Positions 1,113 to 62,859 of a DNA stretch of 64,000 bases are shown here, piece after piece. The stretch's first letter is position 1; each line of letters opens with the position of its first letter. The notes under the pieces are model-generated. The model saw nothing but the letters and a program-made list of their open reading frames with translations, ran no database searches and was not told where the DNA came from. The position numbers and the translations under genes are program-made. The stretch lies in the IMG/VR virus record IMGVR_UViG_3300027710_000011, positions 1 to 64,000 of that record; one strand, given 5' to 3'.

Positions 1113-1118
1113 TCGGCT

Positions 1119-1162
1119 GGGAGAACTCGCTAGTAAAGGAGTTCTCCCTTTCCCTTCTTTTT
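1119..1162 (+). terminator. intrinsic terminator
   Basis: GGGAGAACTC-loop-GAGTTCTCCC followed by a T-rich tract, directly after the stop codon. Confidence 0.75.
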
Positions 1163-1176
1163 AGCTTTTTCTTATT

Positions 1177-1398
1177 ATGCCAATTCGTCCTCTCGCATCC
1201 TTTAACGTTCAAGAACTACAGTCTGTGGACGACGCGTTGGCAATGCTTGACGCAAACATCGAAGACTTGATGACCATGACTAAAGACCAATTGGTTTATG
1301 GTCCAAATGAGTACTGGATACTGGACAAGAACATTTTGTTCCTTGAACAGTACAGCAACAGGCTGGAAAAGCTAATAAGACAGGAGAATAAAAAATGA
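1177..1398 (+). CDS. hypothetical protein (73 aa)
   Basis: ORF track; co-directional with its neighbours and its stop overlaps the next start (ATGA). Confidence 0.65.
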   Translation: MPIRPLASFNVQELQSVDDALAMLDANIEDLMTMTKDQLVYGPNEYWILDKNILFLEQYSNRLEKLIRQENKK

Positions 1399-1583
1399 GT
1401 CAACCGCACCCTCAGCAACTGCAAGCCTGGTTGGCACGGTGTCGGATGAACTTGGCTAAGTTTCGCGCAATACGTCATACACTGACTGAAGAACAACAAG
1501 TTCAGTTCGTTAATGACCAACAGGTGATTCTTAGAACAAGCGTCAGAGTTGTAAAAGGCCTTGCTCGGTTCGAAGGCGTGTAA
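1395..1583 (+). CDS. hypothetical protein (62 aa)
   Basis: AGGAG Shine-Dalgarno (SD) upstream and an ATGA overlap with the previous gene. Confidence 0.65.
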   Translation: MSQPHPQQLQAWLARCRMNLAKFRAIRHTLTEEQQVQFVNDQQVILRTSVRVVKGLARFEGV

Positions 1584-1600
1584 CTATCCAGGAGTGCATC

Positions 1601-2149
1601 TTGTCAGCATCAATCGTTCGCAATTACACAGACATGGAGCTGCGTGGCTCCCTCATCCACGGTAAGGAGCTGTCGGATTTTCCGGCTACCCCTCGTCGTA
1701 ATGAGCAGGTCCTCATCAACGGGGTTCTCTGGGTCTACACGATGGTCGCTGGGTCTCTGACCTGGTTCCCACTCAACACCAAGAAAAACACCCACACTCA
1801 TACCCAAGCCCTGGCCTCCCAGGACTGGACCGTCCAGCACGGTATGAATACCCAGGACTTCGTTCTCGGCGTCTACGGCCCCGACAACAACCTGGTGATG
1901 CCTTCCAGCATCCAACAAGTCACCGACAATAGCTTCCACATCACGTTCACTGAACCTGTCGCTGGCCGCGCTGTCGCCTTCTTCAATACCGCAGCATTTG
2001 CGCCTACAGTGGTCACGCAGTCTGTCACCGCCAATTCGTTGAATATCTCGAATGGCTTGGTCACTGCAGATCAAACTGGGCTCAAGGTCAACGGCAATCA
2101 AGTTCCAGTCTTGAATGCTGAAGGCCATATGGACTACGGTACTCTCTAA
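1601..2149 (+). CDS. tail fibre adapter/structural protein
   Basis: TTG start with AGGAG SD. The HTHTQALASQDWTVQHGM domain resembles the C-terminal domain of the 1-1112 protein. Confidence 0.7.
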   Translation: MSASIVRNYTDMELRGSLIHGKELSDFPATPRRNEQVLINGVLWVYTMVAGSLTWFPLNTKKNTHTHTQALASQDWTVQHGMNTQDFVLGVYGPDNNLVMPSSIQQVTDNSFHITFTEPVAGRAVAFFNTAAFAPTVVTQSVTANSLNISNGLVTADQTGLKVNGNQVPVLNAEGHMDYGTL

Positions 2150-2176
2150 CACCTTCTGAGCAGGAAAGAAAACGAG

Positions 2177-5100
2177 ATGCATACCCCATTGATCCCTCCC
2201 CGCGGCGGCGCTTCTACCGTCGCGTCTTACGTTGGTCCTGCTGGCTCCATCGTCGTCAACACTGACGCAAAAACAATCCACGTCCATGACGGCGTGACCG
2301 CTGGCGGCTTTGCTTTGTCCAAGGTTGGCCACCAGCACACGCTGAACGAAATCACCGCAGCTTTGGGTTTCACGCCTGCTGCTTTGAACGTCAGTGGTCA
2401 AGTCTCCGTTGCTCAACTGGGTACCGGCACTGCAAATGCGACTAAGGTCCTGTTTGGTGACGGCACTTGGAAAGACGCTCCCACCGGCGGTGGTGGCGGC
2501 TCGAGCAATAGCTTGTCTGGCACTGGCACTGTTTCGCCTTCTACTTCGGTGTCCGGCGTTTACGCTGGTGTTACGGCCGGTGTTGGTGAGATGTATCTGG
2601 TCAACGCTGGCGCAGGTTCCAACGAAAAGGCTATTCAGTTCGCCCAGCGCGCTGATGGTGTTTTCCAGATCAATCTGTACAACGACGCTCTCAACAGCAA
2701 TCCCACGTTCTTCTCGCTGGATCGCACCGGCGCAGTTCCTAACATCGCTACGTTCAATGTGAACTCGATGGTGGTGAACGGCGTTCTTAGCGCCAATTCT
2801 TTCGCCGGCGTGGGCACGGCTCTGACAGCGCTGAACGCTTCGAACCTCGCTTCTGGCACAGTGCCTGTTGCGCGATTGGGTAGCGGTACCGCAAGTGCCA
2901 GTACCTACCTCCGTGGCGACGGTACTTGGGACGCTATCAGTGCAGGCGGCTCCGTTGAAGCTGGGAGCATTCTTCCAGCTGCCGGCACCAGCTCTGTCAC
3001 ACTGACTACTGGTAACCAGATTGGTGCCAACACCAGTGCTGACGTCACTATCGGCTCCGGTTCGTCGGCCAACGGCCTGACTGGTGCAGTCACGATTACT
3101 TCCGGCGGTACCGGTTCACTTGGTTCCGGTAACGTGACCTTGAAATCGGGTCAGACTGGTTCTGGCTACGGCTCGGGCGAAGTGATCATCGGCACCGGTG
3201 CGACCAGTGGTAATTCGGGAACACCTGCTGTTTCTGGCGCTATCACGATTGCTACTGGTGGTTGGACTGGTACGGGTACGAATCAGTCGTCGGGCAGCAT
3301 CACGCTGCAAACCGGAACGAAAGCAGGTTCCGGTGTTGGTGGTGACATCAATCTGACAACCGGTACTGGCGGCGAGATTGTGATGACTTCTTCTGTCATC
3401 ACAACAACCGGCAACCTCGGAGTTGGTGGCTTTGGTGGTAACGGTGCCACGCCTGGTCGAATCTTCGCTGCTTCCGGCGGTATCCAGGTTGATCAAACAT
3501 CCTTGGTACCCTCGAATTCGTTGGGCGGTAGCTTCCGTATCGGTTATCTGAATTCTGCGATCAGCGGAACATCGGATGGCTTCCTGACCTGGATGGGCGC
3601 GGCAGCAACGCTGAATGTGTCCGGTGCCAATGGCTCTGTTCTGCTGGCATCGCGTTCTGATTCCGGCACAGCCGGCGTCAGCGTTGCGACAAACAACACG
3701 GCTCGCCTGTTCATTGCTGGCAATGGCGCGTGGGGTTTGTCTGGCGCTAACTACGGCACAGCTGGTCAAGTGTTGACATCGAGCGGCTCGGGCTCTGCAC
3801 CGACCTGGACGTCGCCTGCTGTTGACACCTTGAACGCCACCGGTCCTCGTGGCTTCAACATCGCGACTGCTGCGGTGACTGCCGGTACTTCGAATGACGG
3901 AACTTATCAGATTCCTTGCATTGGTTTGACTGCGCCTAACGCGCCGTTGAACGAAAAAGTTTGGCAATTCAGCGCAAGTAGCGGTGGTGGTTTTGAACTC
4001 GGCGGTTACAACGACGCGTTGCAGGGTGGCTCGTATAGCGCTTATATCACTATCGGTCGCAATGCCGTCGCAGCAAATACCATGCAGTTCAATGCGGCAG
4101 CGATCACATTGAACGGTGCGGTGACCGGTACGTCGTTTGCAGGTTCTGGCGCTGGCTTGACTGCGCTGAATGCTTCGAACTTCAGCACAGGCGTCATGGC
4201 CACCGCTCGTCTGGGTTCCGGTACAGCTGACGCATCGACGTACTTGCGTGGTGACGGCACGTGGGCGGCAGTTTCGGCTGGCGCATCTACGTCGTTGAGC
4301 GCTACAGCGACATCGCCTGCACCTAGCGGTACTTCTGGTACGACGGGCGTGTACGCATCGTCTGTTGGCGGTCAGCCGACGTTCTGGTTCACCAACTCCA
4401 CAGCGGCTGCCAACACCAAGACATCCGTTATTGACCAGACATCCGGCGGCTTGTTGCGGTTCAATTTCACAAATGACTTGTGGAATACAGCAACGGCATG
4501 GCTGTCGGCACAGCGTGTCAGTGGTTCGAACGTTGCGTCTGCTGTCAAGCTGGATGCGAATTCTGTCAATCTGGCAGGTTTGTCTACGGGTCTGCAGCTG
4601 AACGGCTCTGCCGGTACAGCTGGTCAAGTGTTGACTTCGCAAGGCGCCAGCGCTGCTCCTATCTGGACGTCCGCCAGCGTTACGGCTTTGAACGGCACGG
4701 GTACCTTCACACCATCGACTACGACGACAGGTGTTTTTGCTGGCGCAGCCGGCGCTGAGTCACGCATTGTGTTCTCGGCATCTGGAGCCACTGCTGGTAA
4801 CAAACTGTCAATTTTGGCTGGACATTCAGGCGGCTTCCAAGCTAGCTTTGTCAACGACACGTACGATAGTCAAACAGTCTGGTTGCAGGTTGCTCGTTCT
4901 GGTAATACAGCTACGAACATCACGCTCACAGGCACAGCCATCACGCTGAACGCTGCTGTGACTGGCACGTCGTTTGCAGGTACACACACTGGTGTTGGTA
5001 CTGGCTTGACTGCACTGAATGCTTCGAACCTGGCTTCTGGCACGGTGGCAACTGCTCGCCTGGGTACAGGTACTGCCGATAACAGTACCTACCTCCGTGG

Positions 5101-6577
5101 CGACGGTACCTGGGCAGCGGCTGTGGCTACGTCGAGCACATCGTTGAACGGCACTGCTGCACCGAGCGCTCGTTCGTCCAGCACAAGCGGTGTGTTTGCC
5201 GGTACCATCGGTTATCCGTTGATCACGATGACTGCGTCTGGCGCAGGCGCGAATGCTAAGAGTGCCCAGATTTATCTGGACTCCACTACTGGTGCTTTCG
5301 GCATGTCGTTCTTGCCGGACGGCTTGGCTTCGCAAAATCTGTTCTTCACCGCATCGCGCAACGGCGCAACTGCCGCAACGATCACCTTGACTTCTACAGC
5401 CATGAATTTGGCTGTTGGCACTGGTGGTCTGCAGCTGAACGGCTCTGCCGGCACAGCTGGTCAAGTGTTGACTTCCAATGGTCCTAGCGCCGCCCCTACG
5501 TGGGCTGCTCCTGCTCCAGCTGTCTTGGCTGCCACTGGCAACTACGCGACAGTTCTGACCTCGGGCGTCTACGCTGGTTTGCGCACTAACGCTCCTGCTC
5601 TTCAGTTGGTGAATACCAGCTGTGCAACCGATGCGGAAGTGACATCGCTTGTGCACGACAATGACGGCGTTGTTCGTCTGCGTCTGTGGGCCAACAACTT
5701 CGCATCGAACAACTACGCGTTCGAAGTGGTGCGTAACGGCGCAGCAGTGCCGTCGATGTTCAAGTTGTATGGCACCGCCATCAATTTGGCTGTTGGCACT
5801 GGTGGTCTGCAGCTGAATGGCGTTGCTGGCACAGCTGGTCAAGTCCTGATGTCTGGCGGCGCTGGCGTTGCTCCGACATGGTCGAGCACGTATGCAGGTC
5901 AGATGACATTCTCTGCTGGCATCACATGCTCGTCTGTGACTGCAATGGAAGTCGCTGGCGCCTCTGGCGCTCTGCAGCTCGGTTACCTGAATGCAGCAGT
6001 GACTTCGGTGCAAGATGCATTTGTGGCTTGGGGTGGTACTTCCAGTACTCTGGTGTCCGGCGTCACAGGTGCCAGCTCCAACGGTACTCTGGTGCTGTCT
6101 TCGCGTAACACATCCAACGCGGGTGTCACTATCGCGACTAACAATACTGTTCGACTGGTCACTCAGTTCAACGGTACGGTTCGTCCTGGTGCTGATGCGA
6201 CGCAGGACTTCGGCGCTACGACCTTCCGCTGGAACAACGGCTACTTCGGTGCCCTGTTCACAACAGCCGGTACCGTCAGCGTCTCGGATGAGCGTCTGAA
6301 GACCGACATCTTCGATCTGGAAGATGCTGAAGTGCGCGTGGCCCAGCAACTCAAGCAGTTGCTGAAGAAGTATCGTCTGAAGTCGGAAGTTGCGGCTCAA
6401 GGCGCGAAGGCCAAGTGGCACGTTGGCATCATTGCGCAAGCAGTGGTCAAGGCATTCGCAGATGAAGGTCTGGATGCTCACGACTACGCGATGCTCAGCC
6501 TGACTGATGTTGATGGTGTTGATCAATACGGCGTGAACTACGACGAATTGCTCGCATTCATCATCGCTGCTCTGTGA
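2177..6577 (+). CDS. long tail fibre (Mtd_N-like N-terminus, internal repeats, C-terminal peptidase S74 chaperone)
   Basis: N-terminal RGG...GPAGSIVVNTDAKTIHVHDGVTAGG, a G/S/T-rich body and C-terminal SDERLKTDI...GIIAQ...YGVNYDEL. Confidence 0.88.
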   Translation: MHTPLIPPRGGASTVASYVGPAGSIVVNTDAKTIHVHDGVTAGGFALSKVGHQHTLNEITAALGFTPAALNVSGQVSVAQLGTGTANATKVLFGDGTWKDAPTGGGGGSSNSLSGTGTVSPSTSVSGVYAGVTAGVGEMYLVNAGAGSNEKAIQFAQRADGVFQINLYNDALNSNPTFFSLDRTGAVPNIATFNVNSMVVNGVLSANSFAGVGTALTALNASNLASGTVPVARLGSGTASASTYLRGDGTWDAISAGGSVEAGSILPAAGTSSVTLTTGNQIGANTSADVTIGSGSSANGLTGAVTITSGGTGSLGSGNVTLKSGQTGSGYGSGEVIIGTGATSGNSGTPAVSGAITIATGGWTGTGTNQSSGSITLQTGTKAGSGVGGDINLTTGTGGEIVMTSSVITTTGNLGVGGFGGNGATPGRIFAASGGIQVDQTSLVPSNSLGGSFRIGYLNSAISGTSDGFLTWMGAAATLNVSGANGSVLLASRSDSGTAGVSVATNNTARLFIAGNGAWGLSGANYGTAGQVLTSSGSGSAPTWTSPAVDTLNATGPRGFNIATAAVTAGTSNDGTYQIPCIGLTAPNAPLNEKVWQFSASSGGGFELGGYNDALQGGSYSAYITIGRNAVAANTMQFNAAAITLNGAVTGTSFAGSGAGLTALNASNFSTGVMATARLGSGTADASTYLRGDGTWAAVSAGASTSLSATATSPAPSGTSGTTGVYASSVGGQPTFWFTNSTAAANTKTSVIDQTSGGLLRFNFTNDLWNTATAWLSAQRVSGSNVASAVKLDANSVNLAGLSTGLQLNGSAGTAGQVLTSQGASAAPIWTSASVTALNGTGTFTPSTTTTGVFAGAAGAESRIVFSASGATAGNKLSILAGHSGGFQASFVNDTYDSQTVWLQVARSGNTATNITLTGTAITLNAAVTGTSFAGTHTGVGTGLTALNASNLASGTVATARLGTGTADNSTYLRGDGTWAAAVATSSTSLNGTAAPSARSSSTSGVFAGTIGYPLITMTASGAGANAKSAQIYLDSTTGAFGMSFLPDGLASQNLFFTASRNGATAATITLTSTAMNLAVGTGGLQLNGSAGTAGQVLTSNGPSAAPTWAAPAPAVLAATGNYATVLTSGVYAGLRTNAPALQLVNTSCATDAEVTSLVHDNDGVVRLRLWANNFASNNYAFEVVRNGAAVPSMFKLYGTAINLAVGTGGLQLNGVAGTAGQVLMSGGAGVAPTWSSTYAGQMTFSAGITCSSVTAMEVAGASGALQLGYLNAAVTSVQDAFVAWGGTSSTLVSGVTGASSNGTLVLSSRNTSNAGVTIATNNTVRLVTQFNGTVRPGADATQDFGATTFRWNNGYFGALFTTAGTVSVSDERLKTDIFDLEDAEVRVAQQLKQLLKKYRLKSEVAAQGAKAKWHVGIIAQAVVKAFADEGLDAHDYAMLSLTDVDGVDQYGVNYDELLAFIIAAL

Positions 6578-42756: not shown

Positions 42757-42795
42757 TGTTCACCCAAGCAAGCCCGAAGGCTTGTGCTGGATTAC

Positions 42796-44949
42796 TTAGA
42801 TGACGTGATTGTGGATCGCGACCTTCTTGTCGATCACATCTTCCCAGCCCTTGATCGTGATCACGGCCATGATAGGCATGTTCGTGATGTGACGGAAGGC
42901 CGGTTGCACGGTCAGTTCCTTGCTGTTCGCACCGTTGCGGTGGATCGGCAGAGCCAACACCAGCTCAGGCTGATAAGCCATGTTGCCGAAGTTCAGCACG
43001 TTCGGGACGCCTTCCGAAGCATTGGGAGCCTTCAGAGTCATCACGATCTTGCCGTTCATCAGCTTGTTGGGAGTGGAAACCACTTCCAACGACATGCCTT
43101 CACCCAGAGTGCGCATGTCGCCAGTGACCATCAGCCAGCCTTCGGTCACTTGGTCGGTACCGGCCAAGACGATCGGGTCCACGTCGTTGCCGCCGTTCAG
43201 AGCAGCAGCGGCTTGACGCCAGCCGGAGTCACGCACCATGCGATACGACATTTCGCGCATCTTGTTGGTGATGGCTTGCTGGATGTCTTCAGCCAGGTTG
43301 TGCGACTGGATGTTGTTGACGATGGTGCCCAGATCCAGCTCGAACTCTTCGTAGAACGGAGTGATCAAGTGACGCGACACGCCCAGGATGTCCAGGGTAT
43401 CGCCGATCAGGCCTTGCGAACCAACGTAGCGGCTCAGCACGTCCTTGACGCGCAGCAGCTCGTCCACGGCGCCGTTGCTGGCGCGGATGCGAGTGGTGGT
43501 GATCAGAGCGTTCAGGTCGCTGGTGTCGGTGTCATCGCCTTGGCCCAGAGGACGGGGAGCGGTGATAGGCGACAGCAGAGGCACCGAGTAGCACTGGTTG
43601 TACACCGTGATGTCCAGCAGGTCGCCACGCTGACGACGGTTGCTGTTGGTACGACGAGCGTCGATGTTGTAGCCGATCAGCTTGGCGTCGACGAAGGCAG
43701 CGAAGATGGCCTGGATGCCAGCCGGATTGGACGCACCGGGAACGTACTTCACGCCGTTCTGGGTCACCGAAGTCACGGTCACTTCACCAGCCAACAGATT
43801 CATGGTGCCGGTCTGCAGATCCAGCGAACCCGAAACCATGAAGCCCAGACGCACTTCCACGCCGGGAACCACGCCAGCCAGTTCGCCCGGCTTGGCGCCG
43901 TCGATAGCCAGGGTGCTCGAAGTCACCATCACCGACTTGTTTTCGAAGTTCAGGGTGACGCGCTTTTCCGAACCTTGCGGGTTGTAGACGAAGTTCGAAG
44001 TGAACAGGTCCTTGGTCGGGAAGTAGATCACGTCGCCAGTTGCGTCCTTCAGTTGCAAGTAGGCGCCGGCCAGGTGCACGTCACGGTCCACAGCGTCGGT
44101 CGAGTCCATCAGGCCAGATTGCACCAGCGAGTCGACTTGCGACAGGCCGATCAGGCTCATCTGCTGGCCGAACTTCAGAGCGCCGGTGACCACGGCTTCG
44201 CCGTTCTGGTCCACGGTGCTGTGCGGGATGATGGCGCTGTCGACGAACTTGTTGGCAGCTTCGTTGCGGAACACCGGGATGATCGTGGTCTGGTTGTTGC
44301 GCAGGATGTCGGGATCGCGCAGAGCGAACACGATGTTGCGACGCTTGAAGTCGTTCACGTCGCCGGAGGTGGCGCGACGCACTTCGTCCATGACGCTGAT
44401 CAGTTGGATCGAGATCAAGTAGCCGACCTGGTCACGAGTCACCACCACGGTGGGGTAGAAGGCTTCGCCGAACTTGTCTTGCTGAGCCGCTTGCATGTTG
44501 TACGTCACTGTGTACGCAGACATGTTGCGGTTCGATGCGTCGTCGTAGGCTTCCATGGCGGTAGCCAGGCGCTCGACGCCGCCAGCAGCAGCGATCATCA
44601 CGTTGTTGCCATCTTGCGGCAGGCTCGGAGCCTTGCCACCCAGGTAGCTCTTGCCAGCTTGAGCGATCATGGCGGCGCCCAGAGCGGCGTCACGACGAGC
44701 GGGAGTCAGCTTGCCCAGGCCGGAGTCGTTGGCGTAGCCTTCCAGAGCAACACGCAGACGATCCAAGCCGCCGCCGAAGGACTCTTGTTCGGAGTCGTTC
44801 ATGCTTTCCAGAGCGATGCCGGAGCGCACGCCAGCGATCAACGAGGTGCCGCCGTTGGACTGCGCTTCGTTCTTGACAGCGTTCAGGAGACCAGACAGAC
44901 CAGTAGCCGGGATGCGACCAGCCAGGAGACGTTGAACTGCATTTTTCAT
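42796..44949 (-). CDS. major capsid protein (phiKZ gp120-like)
   Basis: YNMQAAQQDKFGEAFYPTV, ARRTNSNRRQRG and KELTVQP motifs; propeptide with ALE/ALE/AME sites; strong codon bias. Start placed at ATG 44949. Confidence 0.88.
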   Translation of the reverse strand: MKNAVQRLLAGRIPATGLSGLLNAVKNEAQSNGGTSLIAGVRSGIALESMNDSEQESFGGGLDRLRVALEGYANDSGLGKLTPARRDAALGAAMIAQAGKSYLGGKAPSLPQDGNNVMIAAAGGVERLATAMEAYDDASNRNMSAYTVTYNMQAAQQDKFGEAFYPTVVVTRDQVGYLISIQLISVMDEVRRATSGDVNDFKRRNIVFALRDPDILRNNQTTIIPVFRNEAANKFVDSAIIPHSTVDQNGEAVVTGALKFGQQMSLIGLSQVDSLVQSGLMDSTDAVDRDVHLAGAYLQLKDATGDVIYFPTKDLFTSNFVYNPQGSEKRVTLNFENKSVMVTSSTLAIDGAKPGELAGVVPGVEVRLGFMVSGSLDLQTGTMNLLAGEVTVTSVTQNGVKYVPGASNPAGIQAIFAAFVDAKLIGYNIDARRTNSNRRQRGDLLDITVYNQCYSVPLLSPITAPRPLGQGDDTDTSDLNALITTTRIRASNGAVDELLRVKDVLSRYVGSQGLIGDTLDILGVSRHLITPFYEEFELDLGTIVNNIQSHNLAEDIQQAITNKMREMSYRMVRDSGWRQAAAALNGGNDVDPIVLAGTDQVTEGWLMVTGDMRTLGEGMSLEVVSTPNKLMNGKIVMTLKAPNASEGVPNVLNFGNMAYQPELVLALPIHRNGANSKELTVQPAFRHITNMPIMAVITIKGWEDVIDKKVAIHNHVI

Positions 44950-44999
44950 GATTTGGTTTTCCGTAGAAGAAAGAGAAAAGAATGACAATCGGAATTGGT

Positions 45000-45738: not shown

Positions 45739-47280
45739 ATGGACAAAAAAATACTTCTCATTAAGGGTGTTACGCTGTTGTTTCGTGAGAGTCAAATTCC
45801 GAACAACGCTGACAACTCAGCGGCGCTGGTTAAAACACTCTTGGAGGGCGTAACGCTCCCAGACGTAAGTGTTGGTGCCATTGACACCGAACGAGAGATC
45901 CTAGGGGCTCTCAAGCAGATTTGTCTTGAGATGTGTGGACAATCGCCTACACATCAATACGTTGCAGTTGAACTGCTACAAAAGATTCACCACGCCACAC
46001 GGCATGACGAAACTCTATACCATACGTTTCGTGAAGGTATCGAAACTCAGTTGTCAGAAGATGAGCTCAAACGCTTTTGTCTGAATCTGGAAGCTGACGT
46101 TAACGAACATGTCCGTGAAGAAAAGATCAGTAAGCTGATTCTTGATGCAGGAATGCAGCTCAAGTTCAAGCGCGATACCGTTGGCAATATGCAAAGCTTT
46201 GCTGCCGACATCGTTCAAAAGCTTGAGCCTTATAGCGTCAGTGCAAGTAAGGAAGATCCTGGTGTTGTTGGTACGGTTGACTTCGGCAACCGTGAACAGA
46301 TGAACCAGATGATCGAAGAGGGTAAGACCCTGAACAGTTCTGAAGGTATTCTTCGTTTGGGTTGGCAAGGTGTCAACCGAATGACTGAAGGTGGTCTGCG
46401 CCGCGGCGAGTTCGTCACAGTGGCGGCCTTGCAACATAACTTCAAGACCGGTTTCTCTATAAATCTGTTCGAGCATATTGCGATGTATAACACACCGCAC
46501 ATGATCAACGTAATGAAGCGTCCGTTGTTGCTTCGGATCACGTTTGAAGATCCGTTGTCTACCAACATGACTTACATGTATCGCAACATCTACGAGAACA
46601 AAACTCGTCAGATGGCCGACGTGATGGGTACACCGACTGCGGAAATGACAGAGTACGTTTATAACGCTCTGACTGCAACGGGTTATGAGATCATGATGAT
46701 GCACGTTAATCCGTCCGAGTGGACGTATCGACACATCACAAACAAGGTCTTGGAACTTGAAGCCCAGGGCTATGAGATCCATGTTCTGGCATTGGACTAT
46801 CTGGCCATGGTTCCTACAACAGGTTGCCGTGTGACCGGTCCTACTGGTTCAGACATCCGAGATATGTTCCGTCGTATGCGTAACTTCTGTGGTCCTCGCA
46901 AGATCACCTGCATCACGCCTCACCAGTTGTCGACTGAAGCCAAGAAGTTGACACGGATGGGTAACGAAGAGAACTTCGTCAAGGACGTGGCTAACAAGGG
47001 TTACTACGATAGCTGTTCTACCATTGACCAAGAGATCGATCTGGAACTCTACATCCACATCGTGAAGGCCGATGGTGCATCCTACTTGACAGTACAGCGC
47101 GGTAAGCACCGTGGCTTCAACCGTACGCCTGAAGCTCACAAGTTCTGCGTGTTGAAGTTTGAAGACGTTGGCGACATCATCCATGACGTTGACGGTGTTG
47201 ATCTGACTCGCAAGCGTCCAGGCGGTGGGCCAATGGGTAGTCCGGATGAGAAACCTCATTGGGACTTTTCCATCGATTAA
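45739..47280 (+). CDS. dnaB: DnaB-like replicative helicase (phiKZ gp118-like)
   Basis: GLRRGE...ALQHNFKTG (variant Walker A), ITFED, LDYL, TPHQLS and QRGKHR. Confidence 0.88.
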   Translation: MDKKILLIKGVTLLFRESQIPNNADNSAALVKTLLEGVTLPDVSVGAIDTEREILGALKQICLEMCGQSPTHQYVAVELLQKIHHATRHDETLYHTFREGIETQLSEDELKRFCLNLEADVNEHVREEKISKLILDAGMQLKFKRDTVGNMQSFAADIVQKLEPYSVSASKEDPGVVGTVDFGNREQMNQMIEEGKTLNSSEGILRLGWQGVNRMTEGGLRRGEFVTVAALQHNFKTGFSINLFEHIAMYNTPHMINVMKRPLLLRITFEDPLSTNMTYMYRNIYENKTRQMADVMGTPTAEMTEYVYNALTATGYEIMMMHVNPSEWTYRHITNKVLELEAQGYEIHVLALDYLAMVPTTGCRVTGPTGSDIRDMFRRMRNFCGPRKITCITPHQLSTEAKKLTRMGNEENFVKDVANKGYYDSCSTIDQEIDLELYIHIVKADGASYLTVQRGKHRGFNRTPEAHKFCVLKFEDVGDIIHDVDGVDLTRKRPGGGPMGSPDEKPHWDFSID

Positions 47281-47283
47281 TGC

Positions 47284-47476
47284 AAAAAAAAAAAGAGGTG
47301 ATCAACAGGTCGGCGCATCGGGACACCCCGATGCGCTAGGAGCACCCGCTCCTTGACATGTTGATCACCTAAAAGACCTCTTGAGCAAAAACTCGTCGAG
47401 GGCTGAGGGAGGAGGGAGTCAGCAGCAACCAAACTACTGAACCCCAGAGACAGGACAACCAATCCTATCTCACCTT
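47284..47476 (-). ncRNA. putative ~190-nt structured small RNA
   Basis: Has its own promoter motif at 47478-47502, two hairpins with UUGGUU loops, a CU-rich tract, a three-way junction and a U11 tail; no credible ORF. Confidence 0.65.
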
Positions 47477-47477
47477 A

Positions 47478-47502
47478 GTCATATGTAACCAAAATAATCT
47501 TC
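47478..47502 (-). promoter_or_regulatory. early-type promoter motif driving the small RNA
   Basis: Minus strand GAAG-N12-ACATATGAC. Confidence 0.58.
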
Positions 47503-47513
47503 ATTGTACGAAA

Positions 47514-48218
47514 ATGGGCACTTCACAATCTATCGAAGTTACAGCTGCGATGAAAAGTCCACGGAAGTCTCGCACTGAGCAAGAGATCATCAAGATTTTT
47601 GATTCTGAGTTGCAGTTGTTCAATCATAGCCGGAACATTGTGAAGGCCAGTCGTATTGGTTCTAAGAATCAAAGCGTCTGTGAAGATGTTCGTGAGCTGA
47701 AGATGGATTTCTTGATTAAAGAGATCAAGAAAGTCATTGGACCGATTGGTAAGCTCAGTGGCGAACGACGAGCGGCTGCCGAAGTGATGGCGTGTGAAAG
47801 CTATTACTTGATTCTGGAAGGGTTGACGCAACTCCATCCAAGCGAGCAGTACGTCAAGAACCTAATGCTCAAGGCATGGGAAGCTGTTCGAGACAACAAG
47901 GGCATTGGTTACTTCAGTCCATTCAACAAGACGGAAGAAGCGCTGTACTGGCTGTATCGTTTCGTGCATGACGGTAACATCCGTTTTAGCAAGTTCCATT
48001 CACACGTTCAAGCTCACTTCGCTCTTGTTGAGTATCGTCTGCGTAACGGCTGCTTGATTAACAAGTACGATCCGAAGTGGACAAAGCTTCAGGAGGATTC
48101 CAGGGTCGTCCACAAATGGGCGGGTAAAGATGGAATGAATCTCAACCCTGAAGCGTATCGTTTCAAGATTGCCGACCTGCACCGAGAAATTACGGGTCGG
48201 CTACATTCAGGCATGTAA
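47514..48218 (+). CDS. hypothetical protein (234 aa)
   Basis: ORF track; no recognisable motif. Confidence 0.65.
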   Translation: MGTSQSIEVTAAMKSPRKSRTEQEIIKIFDSELQLFNHSRNIVKASRIGSKNQSVCEDVRELKMDFLIKEIKKVIGPIGKLSGERRAAAEVMACESYYLILEGLTQLHPSEQYVKNLMLKAWEAVRDNKGIGYFSPFNKTEEALYWLYRFVHDGNIRFSKFHSHVQAHFALVEYRLRNGCLINKYDPKWTKLQEDSRVVHKWAGKDGMNLNPEAYRFKIADLHREITGRLHSGM

Positions 48219-48230
48219 AAAGGATTTCAC

Positions 48231-48920
48231 ATGTTTAAAGATTTACAACCTCAGCCTAACCAATCCCACTTGGCTTGGCTGCTCCCGTTCCAAAAGGCCC
48301 AGGAGATCCATGATCGCCTGTACTGCCGCGATGTGGCATGTATGGCACCCACAGACCGTGCTGTGTTTCTGACAATGTTGCTAGCCAAGTACATTAGCAA
48401 CATTCAAGCAGACATGTACACGTCCAATAACGGCATCACTACTGGCAAGCGTGTCACTGACATCTTGATCACCACAACCTCTTTGCTGACTGCATTGGGC
48501 GTGAGCATTCAAGAGCGTTTGGAAAAACTCAACGTTCCTTCACACGTGAATGGTGAGCAGGCCCTGATGCAATGGTTGAGCAACAACTACGTTTTTGACA
48601 TGGGTCCTACCACGGCTTCTGTCAGCGATGTTTACGATCGCAATATGCAGTACATGGTGGCAATGCCTGTTCAGCTCTACAAGGCTATTGACGCGGCTGA
48701 AAACACCAAGCTGATGCAGACGGCAAGTAACTCTCGCTCAGTACTTGTGAACGCCGCCATGCACTTATGGGTTCAGGCTGTGATCTCTCATACACGCCAT
48801 CGCCATACGTCGTTCATTTACGACATGACGGAACGATTGCATGAAGTGGAGTTGAAGTCAATTCACTCCCAATCATTCGGTCTGTTCCCGAATTACTCGT
48901 TGGACAGTTTGTACCGGTGA
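48231..48920 (+). CDS. hypothetical protein, possibly all-alpha NTP pyrophosphohydrolase-like
   Basis: AAGGA SD. The Q..HDRLY...LAKY...VTDILI helical pattern is only a weak resemblance. Confidence 0.55.
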   Translation: MFKDLQPQPNQSHLAWLLPFQKAQEIHDRLYCRDVACMAPTDRAVFLTMLLAKYISNIQADMYTSNNGITTGKRVTDILITTTSLLTALGVSIQERLEKLNVPSHVNGEQALMQWLSNNYVFDMGPTTASVSDVYDRNMQYMVAMPVQLYKAIDAAENTKLMQTASNSRSVLVNAAMHLWVQAVISHTRHRHTSFIYDMTERLHEVELKSIHSQSFGLFPNYSLDSLYR

Positions 48921-48951
48921 TAAAGAGAGGACTTCGGTCCTCCCTTTATGC
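48920..48951 (+). terminator. hairpin + TTTATG terminator
   Basis: AAAGAGAGGAC-TTCG-GTCCTCCCTTTATG. Confidence 0.8.
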
Positions 48952-49033
48952 CGTCAAATAAACAAAAAATAAAAGACAGAATAACACCCCTGACAGGCTT
49001 TCGCACTGTCAGGGGATTACGTACTGATGGGAA

Positions 49034-50209
49034 TTACTTGTTCAGCTTGTCCAGGATCAGGACGAGAGTCTTGGTGAGACTCTTGTTCGTTTCCAGGAGT
49101 TCAGCGTTAACCTTGCGGGTTTCACGAACTTCACGTTGCACAGCTTGGTTGAAACTGTGAACGGTTTCCAATTTCTGGTGGAGTTCGCGATTGTCAACGA
49201 CAAGTGCTTCGATCATTTCAGTCAGGTGATCAACACGACCTTCGTTGTGATCACCTTGGCTTTCGATCTCTTGCAACTGACGCTGAGTGTCACGATTTCC
49301 GACCGCGATCGCATCCAACACTTGCGAGTGAAGGCTGTATGCGTTATCACGCGGCGCACGGTCATGGTTAGTGCCGTACTGATTGGTAGGCTTTTCGGCC
49401 TTGTTCTTCTTTACTTCTTTTTCTTTGACCTCAACCTTAGGTTTGGTCTTGGTCTTGGTTTCAGGCTGAGGTTCGGGCACCACGTCGTAAACAAGCGGAC
49501 CGCCAATGTCGGCCAGCTTGAGAACCAACTCAGCACTCATCTGTCCAACCAGACGATACTTCATCACCGCCTTTTCGCCTTCGATCTGATACGAGATAGA
49601 GATCAGCCCACTGACAATGGGGCCGGTCGCTTTCTTCGCATTCGTGATCAAACGGCTGCCGACAGAGATGTAACGCAGGCCCTTGGTCAGGAGCGTTGTC
49701 ACATCGCCAACTTGTGCGATGTAGTCGCGCAGTTTGGCCAAGTTCTTCATATCGCCTTCATCGCGAATCGCAGTATTGTCACCGACGGAGTCAAGAACGG
49801 TGAGGAATTCGTGCGTTTCTTCGGCGAGCAGCTCGATCACTGCTTTGGTTTCTTCGACACCGATAGGGGAACCGGAAGTGAAGTTGCCGTGTTTATGAAG
49901 CCAGTCGCTGCCTTCATTAGCGATGTAGAACTCATAGGTGTCATCGTTATTTGCACGACGATTGACAACAAGGTTCAAGCTTTCATGAGACGTAAAAGCT
50001 TTGTGGGTCGGATTGGTGGGTGCCTGAGATTCGGGTTGCTCAATCACCGGGTCGGCAGCGTCAGCGACCGCGTCGTCGCTGTTGCTTGCTTGCTGGGTGG
50101 ATGCATCAGCGACAGCTTCGGCTGGAGGCGCAATGAGTTCCGGGGTAGGAACTTGTTGTGCTTCAGCTTCGATGACAGCAGCTGCGCTTTGAGTGTTCAG
50201 ATCGTACAT
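49034..50209 (-). CDS. hypothetical protein (acidic disordered N-terminus, Lys-rich linker, C-terminal coiled coil)
   Basis: GGAG SD; 391-aa ORF. Confidence 0.75.
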   Translation of the reverse strand: MYDLNTQSAAAVIEAEAQQVPTPELIAPPAEAVADASTQQASNSDDAVADAADPVIEQPESQAPTNPTHKAFTSHESLNLVVNRRANNDDTYEFYIANEGSDWLHKHGNFTSGSPIGVEETKAVIELLAEETHEFLTVLDSVGDNTAIRDEGDMKNLAKLRDYIAQVGDVTTLLTKGLRYISVGSRLITNAKKATGPIVSGLISISYQIEGEKAVMKYRLVGQMSAELVLKLADIGGPLVYDVVPEPQPETKTKTKPKVEVKEKEVKKNKAEKPTNQYGTNHDRAPRDNAYSLHSQVLDAIAVGNRDTQRQLQEIESQGDHNEGRVDHLTEMIEALVVDNRELHQKLETVHSFNQAVQREVRETRKVNAELLETNKSLTKTLVLILDKLNK

Positions 50210-50430
50210 TCTAGTGACTCCGTTAAAATCGTATTTGTTGTTCTATTACAAATACGTCTTGTTTACCAAAGCTCGTGGGTTGTTCACAAACTTTGATCCC
50301 CTTTTTACGTGCGAATACTTACTACTGTATCTGACGTAATTCTCTTTACATTGCCTTTCGCATACTTTTTTGAGCACGCTCAGACATAGGACTTTACAAG
50401 CTGGTATTTTTTACCATCTTTCAAGGGACA

Positions 50431-51380
50431 GCATAAGGGGAGTAGGAGGCGCCCAGCCTCCTACTCCCGATAGCCGGGTCATCGCTGACCCTAAGTGTGG
50501 GTGAGCTAGGGTGGTCAACCAAAAAACCACCGTAACTCACGCCCCTTCCACACTCCTCACAATGCTGTCTGCTCCGACATTTCTATCAGGCACTGGGTCA
50601 GCTCCCCAGCTCATTGTAAGATCAGATTCGCCGAACCTGACTTTCGCTCTTGTTGAGGCTACTCCAGAACTCACCTCAGTTTAATGCTCCGCCATCTGGA
50701 TTGAGCATTTTTCTCTTACCGTATTGCGTGTACGAACCGAACAAACTCCTACAATACAATACGTGAGAAAACGGCGCACCAATGACTTCAGCGAGTCTAG
50801 TGCGCCTTCATTGAAGACGTATACTGGGGGTAGCCCAGCACACGTCGTCAACGTATGAACAGCATAGACAACGAACACTCAACTCCCCGAAAGGAGTCGA
50901 GCATTCGCTTCTATACTGTTTAATGATAATCCTAGGTCACCATCCAAGTCGCCAAGCCGTTGCGTACAGCCTGGTTTGAGCGCCCTCCACAAGAGCCAGT
51001 GTTGCTGGCAATCATGCTTTCAGGTGACTAAGGGCTATCATCGTCTAGTCCTCCGCGCTTCACAGATCTTGGGATTGTTAAGCCCGCTTTCGGGGGCGCC
51101 CTTAATCTCCACGCGATGGCGCTATCTTTCAGATAACTTGCTAGTTAAGATGTCACCTTAACTAACCTGATGCGGCATGGGTTGACAACCCACCCTAGAG
51201 CCAACTTTCGTCGGCCCCATTCAACTATCATGTGTTTACGCTTTCGCGCTATGATAGTGCCTAAGGCATCACTCTTGGCCACTGATGAATTACTCCAAGC
51301 CGGAGCCTATTCCATCAGGTGATCTTCTTCACACGATCGTCTTGCACGTAAAAACTTGCATTACAACCAGCGATTCCACG
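50431..51380 (-). ncRNA. putative ~950-nt highly structured large non-coding RNA
   Basis: Largest gene-free gap in the window. It has a promoter motif at 51384-51408, a terminator at 50432-50468, and more than 15 helices with GAAA/GCGA/UUCG loops and G-U pairs that form only on the minus strand. Confidence 0.8.
50432..50468 (-). terminator. terminator of the large ncRNA
   Basis: Minus strand GGGAGTAGGAGGC-TGGGC-GCCTCCTACTCCC-CTTATGC; same hairpin+TTATG type as the other terminators. Confidence 0.75.
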
Positions 51381-51383
51381 TTT

Positions 51384-51408
51384 GTGATATGTGGCTGTGC
51401 AAATCTAG
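51384..51408 (-). promoter_or_regulatory. early-type promoter motif driving the large ncRNA
   Basis: Minus strand CTAG-N12-ACATATCAC; the core is identical to the 42666 and 62835 copies. Confidence 0.7.
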
Positions 51409-51409
51409 A

Positions 51410-52018
51410 TTACAGCTCAAGCCACTTCTGCAGCTGATGCAATTGATATTCAGCAATTGCATCAATGTGCTCACCTTGTAATCTTTGCGCCACAATCTGT
51501 TCTGGACCAGCCATATCCAATAACCGGACAACGCTGATATAGAAGTAACTACCAAAACTCTTGCGCTGCGCTTCAGAGAAGTGACCTGATATCAACAAGA
51601 CCGCCTTGGTGTTCTTGTCGTAGAAACAACCTTCCCACAACGGAATGTCTTCCGATTCAGGAGATATGTTGTAATTGAACCACGCAGTAGCAACGTTATC
51701 GTTCTCTACGTGGATTCCTAATGAATTGTGGAATGATTCAAATAAAACCACTCCCACCCGTTGTTCATTTTGACAAGTAAGCAGGTCGTTATGACAAGTA
51801 AACAAATATTTAGTTACATCCTGAATCGCGTCTTCTCGCATCTCCGCTATAAAAACTTGTTTGTGCACGATCTGTAGTTTTGCCTTTCTGTTCTTATCAC
51901 AGCCCATTGAACGAGCTTCTTGCTTGAAGACGTCAGTCACAATGTCTTCAAGCATACTGCTAATGACTTGGCGTAATTTGCGATGTTGTATTCTGAACAT
52001 CTCTTTAAGAATTGTCAT
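51410..52018 (-). CDS. hypothetical protein (202 aa)
   Basis: AAGGAG SD; ORF track. Confidence 0.72.
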   Translation of the reverse strand: MTILKEMFRIQHRKLRQVISSMLEDIVTDVFKQEARSMGCDKNRKAKLQIVHKQVFIAEMREDAIQDVTKYLFTCHNDLLTCQNEQRVGVVLFESFHNSLGIHVENDNVATAWFNYNISPESEDIPLWEGCFYDKNTKAVLLISGHFSEAQRKSFGSYFYISVVRLLDMAGPEQIVAQRLQGEHIDAIAEYQLHQLQKWLEL

Positions 52019-62795: not shown

Positions 62796-62834
62796 TTCTT
62801 TTTATCCTATCTAAGTTGGTTGTTAGGTCAAGCA

Positions 62835-62859
62835 GTGATATGTAATTAAAAAAGAATAG
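62835..62859 (-). promoter_or_regulatory. early-type promoter motif
   Basis: Minus strand CTAT-N12-ACATATCAC, just downstream of a terminator. Confidence 0.68.

What the first reader, a model, noticed from the sequence alone, without database searches (positions are those of the whole stretch)
47284..51408. The two RNA genes share a loop motif and flank a three-gene island: possible RNA-protein system
Seen: the 3' domain of the large RNA has a hairpin GUGAGUUA-C-GGUGGUU-[UUUUGGUU]-GACCACC-C-UAGCUCAC (about 50501-50540) whose loop contains the same UUGGUU found twice in the small RNA. Both RNAs have the same promoter class and orientation, 3 kb apart. Between them lie three unannotated genes (47514-48218, 48231-48920, and 49034-50209, which has a Lys-rich linker and a coiled coil). 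Inference: a common protein partner, possibly encoded locally, binds UUGGUU loops. A hexamer match alone is weak evidence.
Basis: inference. Interest (0 to 1): 0.62.

Follow-up and report, generated by a model that had tools for sequence, protein, structure and literature searches.

The report
Two jumbo-phage RNAs sharing one loop
A giant bacterial virus carries a previously undescribed ~960-base folded RNA and a ~190-base RNA that show the same conserved hairpin-loop sequence three times, which points to a shared binding partner, but the genes between them are probably not it.

Summary
The window is the first 64 kb of a 277-kb jumbo phage related to Ralstonia phage RP12.

- **RNAs.** Both ORF-free stretches are real structured RNAs on the minus strand: about 190 nt (47284-47475) and about 960 nt (50430-51380). 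Neither matches an Rfam family. Ten related contigs support them (94-96% of cells paired, against 34-48% in slid controls).
- **Transcription.** Each starts at the phage's recurring ACATATCAC-type motif. That motif occurs 17 times, always on the minus strand, and is probably the early promoter. Each RNA ends at a terminator.
- **Shared loop.** All three loops end in UUGGUUG. GGUU is invariant, and these are the best-conserved apical loops in both RNAs.
- **Gene block.** The order sRNA, gene 1, gene 2, gene 3, large RNA is kept in every relative with enough flank.
- **Local protein partner: not supported.** Gene 2 has a dimeric-dUTPase-like fold. Gene 1 is missing from three relatives that keep both RNAs. 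Gene 3 has no recognisable RNA-binding fold.
- **RP12, RP31 and FLC1-1B.** They keep part of the large RNA's 3' domain. They lack the loop hairpin, the small RNA and all three genes.

The partner and function remain unknown. The main finding is a new large phage RNA family.

The parts
47478..47486 (-). Promoter-class motif of the small RNA (ACATATGAC), with a T-rich stretch upstream
   Evidence: One-base variant of ACATATCAC, which occurs 17 times and only on the minus strand. Relatives carry TTTCAG-NN-ACTTATCAT or ACTTATTAC at the same place.
47284..47475 (-). Small structured RNA, about 190 nt. The 5' end is inferred from the promoter motif; the 3' end is the U-run.
   Evidence: Fold z = -8.4. 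Found in 10 loci by model R1. 96.0% of cells paired against 38-48% in slid controls; 41 of 60 pairs compensatory; 0 of 500 shuffles as good. G-U pairs fit only the minus strand.
47447..47471 (-). Small RNA stem-loop 1. The apical loop ends in UUGGUUG (47462-47456).
   Evidence: Loop UGGUU identical in 10 of 10 homologues. Stem has compensatory changes.
47419..47440 (-). Small RNA stem-loop 2. Apical loop UUUGGUUG (47433-47426).
   Evidence: GGUU invariant; loop identity 0.93. 10 of 13 stem pairs have compensatory changes.
47405..47418 (-). Unpaired C/U-rich tract with conserved UCCUCCCU (47413-47406), complementary to a Shine-Dalgarno sequence
   Evidence: CCTCC and the neighbouring bases are conserved in all aligned homologues and lie outside the predicted helices.
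47284..47360 (-). Terminator of the small RNA: a long stem with a three-way junction (47360-47296), then a run of 11 U
   Evidence: 12 of 16 outer-stem pairs are compensatory. The U-run follows the hairpin only on the minus strand.
47514..48218 (+). Gene 1 (234 aa), function unknown. It is dispensable within the clade.
   Evidence: ORF. No Pfam, PHROG or PDB match. Homologues share 27-86% identity. Absent in L013, L021 and the 240-kb contig.
48231..48920 (+). Gene 2 (229 aa), a dimeric-dUTPase-like all-alpha protein and the best-conserved gene of the block
   Evidence: Model pTM 0.84. VIA-align Z = 11.3, 9.7 and 9.6 to three dimeric dUTPases; the next hit scores 6.2. Homologues share 56-94% identity. 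Only 11 relatives among 1.8 billion representative proteins.
49034..50209 (-). Gene 3 (391 aa): acidic disordered N-terminus, globular domain (about residues 72-245), Lys-rich disordered linker, C-terminal coiled coil
   Evidence: No fold match for the globular domain. Only coiled-coil Pfam noise.
50265..50297 (-). Hairpin in the leader of gene 3: 13-bp stem, loop AACAACC (50284-50278), complementary to GGUUGU of the shared loops
   Evidence: The same loop with covarying stems is in L003, L007 and L008. The loop differs in L009, L013, L017, L019 and L021.
50381..50412 (-). Conserved element between the large RNA's terminator and gene 3 (AAAAAAUACCAG ... AGUCCUAUGUCUG). It contains TATG.
   Evidence: Nearly invariant in the alignments. 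The motif AGTCNTATGT occurs only 3 times in the genome. Its role as gene 3's promoter is inferred only.
50427..50468 (-). Terminator of the large RNA: G+C-rich hairpin followed by CUUAUGCUGUC
   Evidence: 7 of 8 stem pairs are compensatory. The same arrangement, hairpin plus CTTTATGC(A/T)GTC, stands just before other promoter motifs at 62843, 111125 and 172149.
50430..51380 (-). Large structured RNA, about 950-960 nt. Both ends are inferred from the promoter motif and the terminator.
   Evidence: It lies in the longest ORF-free stretch of the 277-kb genome. Fold z = -10.5. Several GAAA tetraloops appear only on the minus strand. Conserved in 10 loci. Covariation: 3' domain 95.8% paired with 47 of 74 pairs compensatory; central domain 94.3% with 30 of 61. 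No Rfam match.
50493..50555 (-). Long helix of the large RNA with the invariant internal loop GGAAGGGGCG.
   Evidence: Helices 7-9 are 98-100% paired with compensatory changes. Loop identity 0.97. This segment is not aligned in the RP12 and FLC1-1B homologues.
51384..51392 (-). Promoter-class motif of the large RNA (ACATATCAC), with upstream TCTAGATTTGCACAG
   Evidence: One of the 17 exact copies. Conserved in relatives including the distant L016.

Best explanation
Shown:
- Two independently transcribed, highly structured non-coding RNAs of a phiKZ-like jumbo phage sit about 3 kb apart on the same strand. One is about 190 nt and the other about 960 nt.
- Each lies between the phage's recurring 9-10-nt promoter-like motif and a terminator.
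- Both display the same apical loop, a U-rich run ending in GGUUG: twice on the small RNA and once on the tip of a long helix in the large RNA's 3' domain.
- The loop is held constant while the stems covary.

Inferred:
- The motif is the early promoter read by the virion RNA polymerase. Both RNAs would then be made at the start of infection.
- The loop is a recognition site for one trans-acting partner, either a protein or an RNA.
- The small RNA would work as a compact two-site version of the site on the large RNA. It could compete for the partner or bring it to the large RNA.
- Its conserved unpaired UCCUCCCU tract gives it a second, Shine-Dalgarno-complementary face.

The partner is not identified. 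Of the three genes in between, only gene 3 remains a candidate (globular domain, Lys-rich linker, coiled coil). Gene 2 is a dUTPase-like enzyme and gene 1 is dispensable. The large RNA is a new family of large ornate phage RNA. Part of its 3' domain also occurs in the cultured Ralstonia phages RP12, RP31 and FLC1-1B.
For: RNAs are real:
- Fold z-scores of -10.5 and -8.4.
- Covariation in three separately modelled segments. Cells paired: 95.8%, 96.0% and 94.3%, against 34-48% when partners are slid. Compensatory pairs: 47 of 74, 41 of 60 and 30 of 61. No shuffle out of 500 did as well.
- No ORF longer than 65 aa in the region.

Separate transcription units:
- The promoter motif occurs 17 times on one strand only.
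- The large RNA's terminator type recurs elsewhere in the genome.
- The small RNA ends in a hairpin followed by a U-run.
- The phage encodes RNA polymerase beta and beta' fragments.
- In such phages a conserved ~10-nt motif that can be found bioinformatically marks early promoters (PMC7598289).

Shared loop:
- UUGGUUG lies at the 3' side of all three loops.
- These are the most conserved apical loops of both RNAs.

Linkage:
- Gene order is conserved in all nine relatives with enough flank for the large RNA and in all that cover the small RNA site.
- In the RP12 and FLC1-1B homologues the loop hairpin has no aligned counterpart. The small RNA is not found in RP12, RP31 or FLC1-1B, and the three genes have no hit in any phage record.
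Against: - No transcript data exist. No RNA run holds the locus, so the ends, the timing and even expression are inferred.
- A shared 7-mer alone arises in 7% of shuffles.
- A conserved loop can be an intramolecular tertiary contact in each RNA and need no common partner.
- Nothing shows binding to any protein.
- All relatives were found through gene 2 or through an RNA pattern. Co-occurrence of gene 2 with the RNAs is therefore partly built into the sampling.
- The contrast with the RP12 group is a single evolutionary event.
Confidence: 0.5

Rival explanations
1. One reading: a protein encoded in the island binds the GGUUG loops of both RNAs and forms an RNA-protein complex. Gene 3 is the only plausible candidate.
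For: - The gene block stays between the two RNAs in all relatives.
- Gene 3 lies directly downstream of the large RNA on the same strand.
- It has a Lys-rich disordered linker and a coiled coil that would make it multivalent.
- The RP12-type phages lack the island, and neither the small RNA nor the loop hairpin was found in them.
- Two gene 3 homologues give a faint KH-domain hit at E = 0.11.
Against: - Gene 2 is dUTPase-like.
- Gene 1 is missing from relatives that keep the loops.
- Gene 3's globular domain matches no RNA-binding fold. It is also poorly conserved (27-41% identity to most relatives) while the loops are invariant.
- Genes 1 and 3 lack the promoter motif used by the RNAs.
- No binding test was possible.
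Confidence: 0.18
2. The loops are RNA-pairing sites. GGUUG loops form kissing contacts with CAACC-containing hairpin loops or start regions of phage mRNAs, including gene 3's own leader. The RNAs would then regulate translation, helped by the small RNA's anti-Shine-Dalgarno tract.
For: - Gene 3's leader has a 13-bp hairpin with loop AACAACC. The loop is kept with covarying stems in L003, L007 and L008.
- Two further 5' leaders carry hairpins with CAACCA(A) loops, at 62822 and 104725 on the minus strand.
- CAACCAA is the commonest of its 35 same-composition permutations in the -45 to +12 windows of 283 predicted genes. It occurs 11 times, ACAACCA 10, AACAACC 7, and no other permutation more than 5.
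- The small RNA has a conserved unpaired UCCUCCCU.
Against: - The AACAACC loop is absent from the gene 3 leaders of L009, L013, L017, L019 and L021, although those phages keep GGUUG loops.
- The enrichment near start codons was not seen in 106 crude start windows from relatives.
- Five to six base pairs is short.
- My gene starts were called by a crude script.
Confidence: 0.17
3. The shared loop is a structural module used independently by each RNA, with no common partner. For example, a GG-containing loop like a tRNA D-loop could dock into a receptor within or between copies of the same RNA, as in the RNA-only assemblies of ROOL and GOLLD.
For: - Invariant loops on covarying stems are typical of tertiary contacts.
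- The large RNA has several GAAA tetraloops and other invariant unpaired blocks.
- Large phage RNAs are known to assemble through loop contacts (bioRxiv 10.1101/2024.12.08.627333, listed; its abstract only).
Against: - The small RNA is too small to need two copies of a docking loop for its own fold.
- No receptor motif was identified.
- The same word recurring in two different RNAs with the same promoter class is better explained by a common ligand.
Confidence: 0.12
4. The 1.2-kb stretch is not an RNA gene. It could be a decayed protein gene, a replication origin beside DnaB, or a self-splicing intron remnant.
For: It lies near the replicative helicase gene. It is the largest ORF-free gap in the genome.
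Against: - Compensatory base changes occur in about half or more of the predicted pairs in both tested segments of the large RNA.
- The signals are strand-specific: GAAA tetraloops and G-U pairs fit only the minus strand.
- It has its own promoter motif and terminator.
- No intron family matches and there are no flanking exon halves.
- No repeats typical of an origin were seen by eye in the sequence. This was not tested formally.
Confidence: 0.03

Closest known systems
GOLLD and ROOL large ornate RNAs of phages and prophages
   Same: - Very large (600-800 nt or more), intricately folded non-coding RNAs of unknown function.
- Carried by phages and often found beside tRNA genes. The RP12 and FLC1-1B homologues here lie next to tRNA genes.
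- Defined by covariation rather than by function.
   Different: - No match to either Rfam model, even at E up to 10.
- Longer, at about 960 nt.
- Found in phiKZ-like jumbo phages.
- Paired with a small RNA that repeats one of its loops.
- Multimer formation is untested.
Protein-titrating small RNAs with repeated loop motifs (CsrB/RsmZ type, GGA loops binding CsrA/RsmA)
   Same: A small RNA shows the same short G-rich word in several hairpin loops. That suggests multivalent capture of one partner.
   Different: - The word is GGUUG, not GGA.
- There are only two copies.
- The RNA is phage-encoded.
- The same loop also sits on a second, much larger RNA.
- No partner is known. This comparison rests on my own knowledge of the Csr/Rsm systems.
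Kissing-loop antisense regulators (for example the CopA/CopT type, loop-loop pairing near a ribosome-binding site)
   Same: A stable hairpin presents a 6-8-nt loop. Complementary loops (CAACC) occur in 5' leaders, including that of the neighbouring gene 3.
   Different: - The regulator and its possible targets are not antisense products of one locus.
- The complementarity is short and is not conserved across the whole clade.
Non-coding RNAs reported for phage phiKZ
   Same: Jumbo phages with their own RNA polymerases are reported to express non-coding RNAs of unknown role (review PMC13282480).
   Different: - No sequence relation was found.
- blastn and the covariance models find nothing in the more distant jumbo phages tested: Burkholderia phage FLC9, Xanthomonas phage LucasX and Pseudomonas phage Noxifer.
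- phiKZ itself was not scanned with the models.
Dimeric (all-alpha) dUTPases and MazG-like NTP pyrophosphatases (for gene 2)
   Same: The predicted fold aligns over 146-157 residues with three dimeric dUTPases at Z = 11.3, 9.7 and 9.6. This is well above the next hit at 6.2.
   Different: - No Pfam, PHROG or PDB sequence match.
- Catalytic residues were not checked.
- The family is very rare, with 11 relatives among 1.8 billion representatives.

Membership tests
GOLLD / ROOL / other Rfam large RNAs (HEARO, OLE, raiA and others) | Score at or near the family's covariance-model threshold | tested here: not met
   cmscan of the whole window at gathering thresholds gave 0 hits. The region 47200-51500 at E up to 10 gave only three chance-level hits, none to a large RNA. 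Five relatives' loci at E up to 10 gave nothing in the RNA regions.
Group I / group II self-splicing introns | Match to the intron core models, and interruption of a host gene with exon halves on both sides | tested here: not met
   No Rfam intron hit. The flanking ORFs (51410-52018 and 49034-50209) are complete genes with their own starts and stops. The RNA has its own promoter motif and terminator.
Structured non-coding RNA (general criterion) | Base pairs kept through compensatory changes, clearly above controls | tested here: met
   94-96% of cells paired against 34-48% when slid; 30-47 compensatory pairs per segment against 4-13 when slid; 0 of 500 shuffles as good. The alignments were fitted to the models, but the independent MAFFT/RNAalifold runs agree.
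[quoted passage not shown] | A highly conserved ~10-nt motif recurring upstream of operons, found bioinformatically, in a phage that encodes multisubunit RNA polymerases | tested here: met
   ACATATCAC occurs 17 times, all on one strand, with shared upstream context. RNAP beta and beta' fragments are encoded. The criterion is taken from PMC7598289.
[quoted passage not shown] | Mapped transcription start about 10 nt downstream of the motif, and expression early and independent of protein synthesis | not testable with these tools
   No RNA sequencing run holds this DNA.
CsrA/RsmA-sponging small RNAs | Multiple GGA motifs in hairpin loops | tested here: not met
   The conserved loops read UUGGUUG, GUGGUUG or GAGGUUG. 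No conserved GGA is in a loop.
Dimeric dUTPase / all-alpha NTP pyrophosphatase superfamily (gene 2) | All-alpha dUTPase fold | tested here: met
   VIA-align: 5myd_A Z 11.3 (rmsd 3.0, 146 aligned); 2yay_A Z 9.7; 1w2y_A Z 9.6; next hit 6.2. Foldseek alone was weak. For helical proteins Z below about 13 can be a common arrangement, so this is fold-level evidence only.
Dimeric dUTPase / all-alpha NTP pyrophosphatase superfamily (gene 2) | Sequence-model match and conserved metal-binding acidic motifs | tested here: inconclusive
   No Pfam, PHROG or PDB sequence hit. Invariant Asp and Glu residues exist in the family alignment, but they were not mapped onto the dUTPase active site.
RNA-binding protein folds (KH, RRM, OB, Sm, Whirly/PUR) for gene 3 | Confident structural or sequence match of the globular domain | tested here: inconclusive
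   The hit lists were dominated by the coiled coil. The best rows covering residues 76-224 score Z below 3. PUR and Whirly rows have TM of 0.22 or less. KH_SLS1_2 hits at E = 0.11 in 2 of 11 members.

The most novel reading that the evidence does not exclude
The ~960-nt RNA is a new class of large ornate phage RNA. Together with the small RNA, and through the shared GGUUG loops, it would build an early-infection RNA or RNA-protein assembly specific to nucleus-forming-type jumbo phages. Possible roles are a scaffold or a decoy that acts on host or phage translation. This would be a two-RNA system without precedent among phage non-coding RNAs.
Probability: 0.2. Interest if true: 0.9.

Novelty: new variant of a known kind. 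Interest (0 to 1): 0.72.

Why it matters
Only about a dozen bacterial or phage RNA classes above 400 nt are known, and most still lack a function. This is my own count from the field. Here is another one, about 960 nt, with strong covariation support, in jumbo phages that run their own transcription.

- It comes with a companion small RNA that repeats one of its loops. That gives a concrete handle for experiments: mutate the loop, pull down what binds it.
- Part of its 3' domain also lies in unannotated gaps of cultured Ralstonia phages (RP12, RP31, FLC1-1B). Bench work is therefore possible without isolating the subsurface phage.
- For annotation, it shows that the largest "empty" gaps of these genomes are RNA genes.

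Tried and rejected
- **Known RNA families.** Rfam at gathering and at permissive thresholds, on the window and on relatives, gave nothing. ARAGORN found no tRNA or tmRNA in the window.
- **DNA similarity.** blastn, near and distant modes, of both RNA regions against 50,697 phage records gave nothing.
- **Relatives in IMG/VR.** Protein patterns from gene 3 and DnaB found none. A 21-nt RNA pattern found nothing in viral contigs. In metagenome contigs it found only the source record plus one 1165-bp contig, L016.
- **Protein searches.** Pfam, PHROGs and PDB sequence searches of the three proteins gave nothing usable. tblastn of all three against phages gave nothing.
- **Gene 3 fold.** Searched in PDB by Foldseek and twice by VIA-align, in BFVD and in the ESM Atlas. 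Only coiled-coil matches came back and the globular domain stayed unplaced. Gene 1 in the Atlas gave only noise.
- **A second promoter class for genes 1 and 3 (AGTCNTATGT): rejected.** The motif occurs only 3 times in the genome.
- **Genome-wide CAACCAA enrichment at start codons as evidence for RNA targets.** Seen in this genome but not in relatives' loci. I keep it only as a weak lead.
- **tRNA 3'-end (NCCA) pairing by UGGU: rejected.** One loop in the L009 and L013 relatives reads GAGGUUG, which lacks the U needed.
- **More distant gene 2 relative.** The contig of P0020 is too short to show neighbours.
- **Expression data.** No RNA run holds the locus.
- **Sigma-70 promoter scan.** It found fewer sites than chance in the region and none at the RNAs.

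Full report
**Where this is.** The window is the first 64 kb of a 276,772-bp virus record, assembled from a subsurface metagenome. Its DnaB-like helicase (45739-47280, PF20307) is 53% identical to that of Ralstonia phages RP12 and RP31, and its neighbours include a phiKZ-type major capsid protein. The genome encodes fragments of multisubunit RNA polymerase beta and beta'. It is therefore a phiKZ-like jumbo phage. In RP12 the helicase gene is followed by an HNH endonuclease gene. Here it is followed by the 4.1-kb stretch in question.

**The observation.** The three ORFs are at the stated coordinates.

The small ORF-free stretch (47281-47513) folds on the minus strand into three stem-loops plus a terminator hairpin that is followed by eleven U (z = -8.4). 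The 1.2-kb stretch (50210-51409) holds the longest ORF-free gap in the whole genome. It folds far better than shuffles (z = -10.5) and shows several GAAA tetraloops that exist only on the minus strand.

**Both are real RNAs.** Homologues of gene 2 led to related jumbo-phage contigs in Logan and ENA assemblies. An RNA pattern found one more contig. All keep the order DnaB, a variable gene, small RNA (-), gene 1 (+), gene 2 (+), gene 3 (-), a 1.2-1.3-kb gene-free stretch, then conserved genes.

Alignments show invariant blocks separated by helices with compensatory changes. Three covariance models were built and the structures counted:

| Segment | Cells paired | Paired when slid | Compensatory pairs | Shuffles as good |
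|---|---|---|---|---|
| Large RNA, 3' domain | 95.8% | 34-43% | 47 of 74 | 0 of 500 |
| Small RNA | 96.0% | 38-48% | 41 of 60 | 0 of 500 |
| Large RNA, central domain | 94.3% | 36-47% | 30 of 61 | 0 of 500 |

The alignments behind these counts were fitted to the models. The plain MAFFT plus RNAalifold runs gave the same helices. No Rfam 15 family matches in the window or in relatives, even at E up to 10. The papers I could search describe nothing like it.

**Transcription signals.** ACATATCAC occurs 17 times in the genome, always on the minus strand, where about 2 would be expected. It has a shared upstream context (CTA, a T-rich run, CAG or AAC).
- The large RNA has an exact copy at 51392-51384.
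- The small RNA has ACATATGAC at 47486-47478. Its relatives have TTTCAG-NN-ACTTATCAT or ACTTATTAC.
- In RNAP-encoding jumbo phages, the conserved ~10-nt motif that can be found bioinformatically is the early, virion-polymerase promoter. Middle and late promoters are not found that way (PMC7598289). I therefore infer that both RNAs are early transcripts.
- The large RNA ends in a G+C-rich hairpin followed by CUUAUGCUGUC. The same arrangement stands in front of other promoter copies at 62843, 111125 and 172149. It is therefore a terminator, and the RNA is a unit separate from gene 3.
- A conserved element with TATG (50412-50381) lies between this terminator and gene 3. Its motif is not a recurring class.

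**The shared loop.** A scan for hairpins shows that all three loops end with UUGGUUG just before the closing stem: [UUGGUUG], [UUUGGUUG] and [UUUUUGGUUG].
- By itself, a 7-mer shared in this way appears in 7% of shuffles.
- Conservation makes it strong. In ten homologues these loops have column identities of 1.00, 0.93 and 0.97, against 0.30-0.88 for every other apical loop. GGUU is invariant and the stems covary.
- The third UUGGUU in the small region lies in a non-conserved stem upstream of the predicted start, so it does not count.
- The small RNA also has a conserved unpaired UCCUCCCU, complementary to a Shine-Dalgarno sequence.

**The three genes.**
- **Gene 2** is the best conserved (56-94% identity). 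Its confident model (pTM 0.84) aligns with three dimeric dUTPases at Z = 11.3, 9.7 and 9.6, with the next hit at 6.2. No sequence model matches. It is most likely a divergent all-alpha nucleotide pyrophosphatase.
- **Gene 1** has no match anywhere. It is absent from L013, L021 and a 240-kb contig. L013 and L021 keep both RNAs; no DNA was available for the 240-kb contig.
- **Gene 3** has a disordered acidic N-terminus, a confidently modelled globular domain (about residues 72-245), a disordered Lys-rich linker and a long coiled coil. The globular domain found no partner in any library. The lists were dominated by the coiled coil and I could not refold the domain alone, so this is not evidence of a new fold.

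**Distribution.**
- The 3'-domain model finds a partial homologue in RP12 (129691-130071, E = 1e-12), RP31 and FLC1-1B. In RP12 and FLC1-1B the hit lies in an unannotated 0.9-1.0-kb gap near tRNA genes. The RP31 neighbourhood was not inspected.
- In the RP12 and FLC1-1B alignments the segment that carries the GGUUG hairpin has no aligned counterpart: a longer, unrelated stretch in RP12 and only a few bases in FLC1-1B.
- The small-RNA model finds nothing in RP12, RP31 or FLC1-1B. The central-domain model finds nothing in RP12 or FLC1-1B; RP31 was not scanned with it.
- None of the three proteins has a tblastn hit in any of 50,697 phage records.
- FLC9, LucasX and Noxifer have no hit.
- So part of the large RNA's 3' domain exists without the island. 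This argues against an obligatory local protein for the RNA as a whole. The loop hairpin, the small RNA and the island do appear together, which fits a linked accessory module. But that is one contrast, and my sampling within the clade ran through gene 2.

**An RNA-pairing alternative.**
- Gene 3's leader has a 13-bp hairpin with loop AACAACC (50297-50265), complementary to GGUUGU. The loop is kept with covarying stems in L003, L007 and L008. It is replaced by other loops in five further relatives that still have GGUUG loops.
- Leaders at 62822 and 104725 also carry CAACCA(A) loops.
- CAACCAA is unusually common near predicted starts in this genome but not in relatives' loci.
- I keep this as a rival, not as the main reading.

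**Verdict.** The RNAs, their promoter class, the shared loop and the conserved neighbourhood are real. The most likely meaning of the loop is a shared recognition site for a partner that is still unknown. A locally encoded protein partner is possible only for gene 3 and has no positive evidence. The more important result is a new large structured RNA family in jumbo phages, with a companion small RNA. No transcript data exist for it, so ends and timing are inferred.

Noticed in passing
window 42784-44988: ORFs of about 730 aa are open on both strands over a stretch with 60% G+C, against about 48% around it. The minus-strand ORF corresponds to the phiKZ-type major capsid protein by synteny with RP12 and the relatives (PF25620), so the plus-strand ORF is probably an artefact of composition.
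   Followed up: partly
window 1-6000: The first 6 kb of the record have 51-63% G+C, against 43-53% for most of the rest of the window. I did not examine what they encode.
   Followed up: no
window 62809-62843 (minus strand): A promoter-class motif (ACATATCAC, 62843-62835) is followed by a leader hairpin with loop CAACCAAC. That loop is complementary to the shared UUGGUUG loop. It lies 20 nt before the start of gene 62795-62214. A similar hairpin with loop CAACCA and a 10-bp stem lies at genome position 104725, outside the window.
   Followed up: partly
whole genome; in the window: 42674, 51392, 62843 (minus strand): ACATATCAC occurs 17 times, all on the minus strand, each with CTA and a T-rich run upstream. 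It is probably the phage's early promoter set. Several copies are preceded by a hairpin plus CTTTATGC(A/T)GTC, a likely phage-specific terminator signal.
   Followed up: partly
G000 outside the window: 114259-114661, 215128-215809, 107316-107889, 78397-78662: Further ORF-free gaps of the same genome fold much better than shuffles (z down to -8.2) and may be additional RNA genes. Models R1-R3 do not match them. The only tRNA of the genome (Thr, UGU) is at 112133-112207.
   Followed up: no
L003, L004, L005 (relatives), locus positions about 4598-7929 in L003: In these close relatives the DnaB-like gene is split into two pieces by a 473-aa ORF with a weak HNH_3 hit. It looks like an intron or intein-type insertion that the window's phage lacks.
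   Followed up: no
RP12 NC_041911.1 129649-130565; FLC1-1B LC819005.1 125264-126303: Unannotated 0.9-1.0-kb gaps in published Ralstonia jumbo-phage genomes contain a partial homologue of the large RNA's 3' domain, close to tRNA genes. RP12 has another 940-nt unannotated gap at 116136-117074.
   Followed up: partly
window 51410-52018 (minus strand): The 202-aa gene just upstream of the large RNA has no family match. The ORF at this position varies among relatives: 189-225 aa in L007, L008, L009 and L017. L003 has no counterpart, and there the terminator of the next gene directly precedes the RNA's promoter.
   Followed up: no
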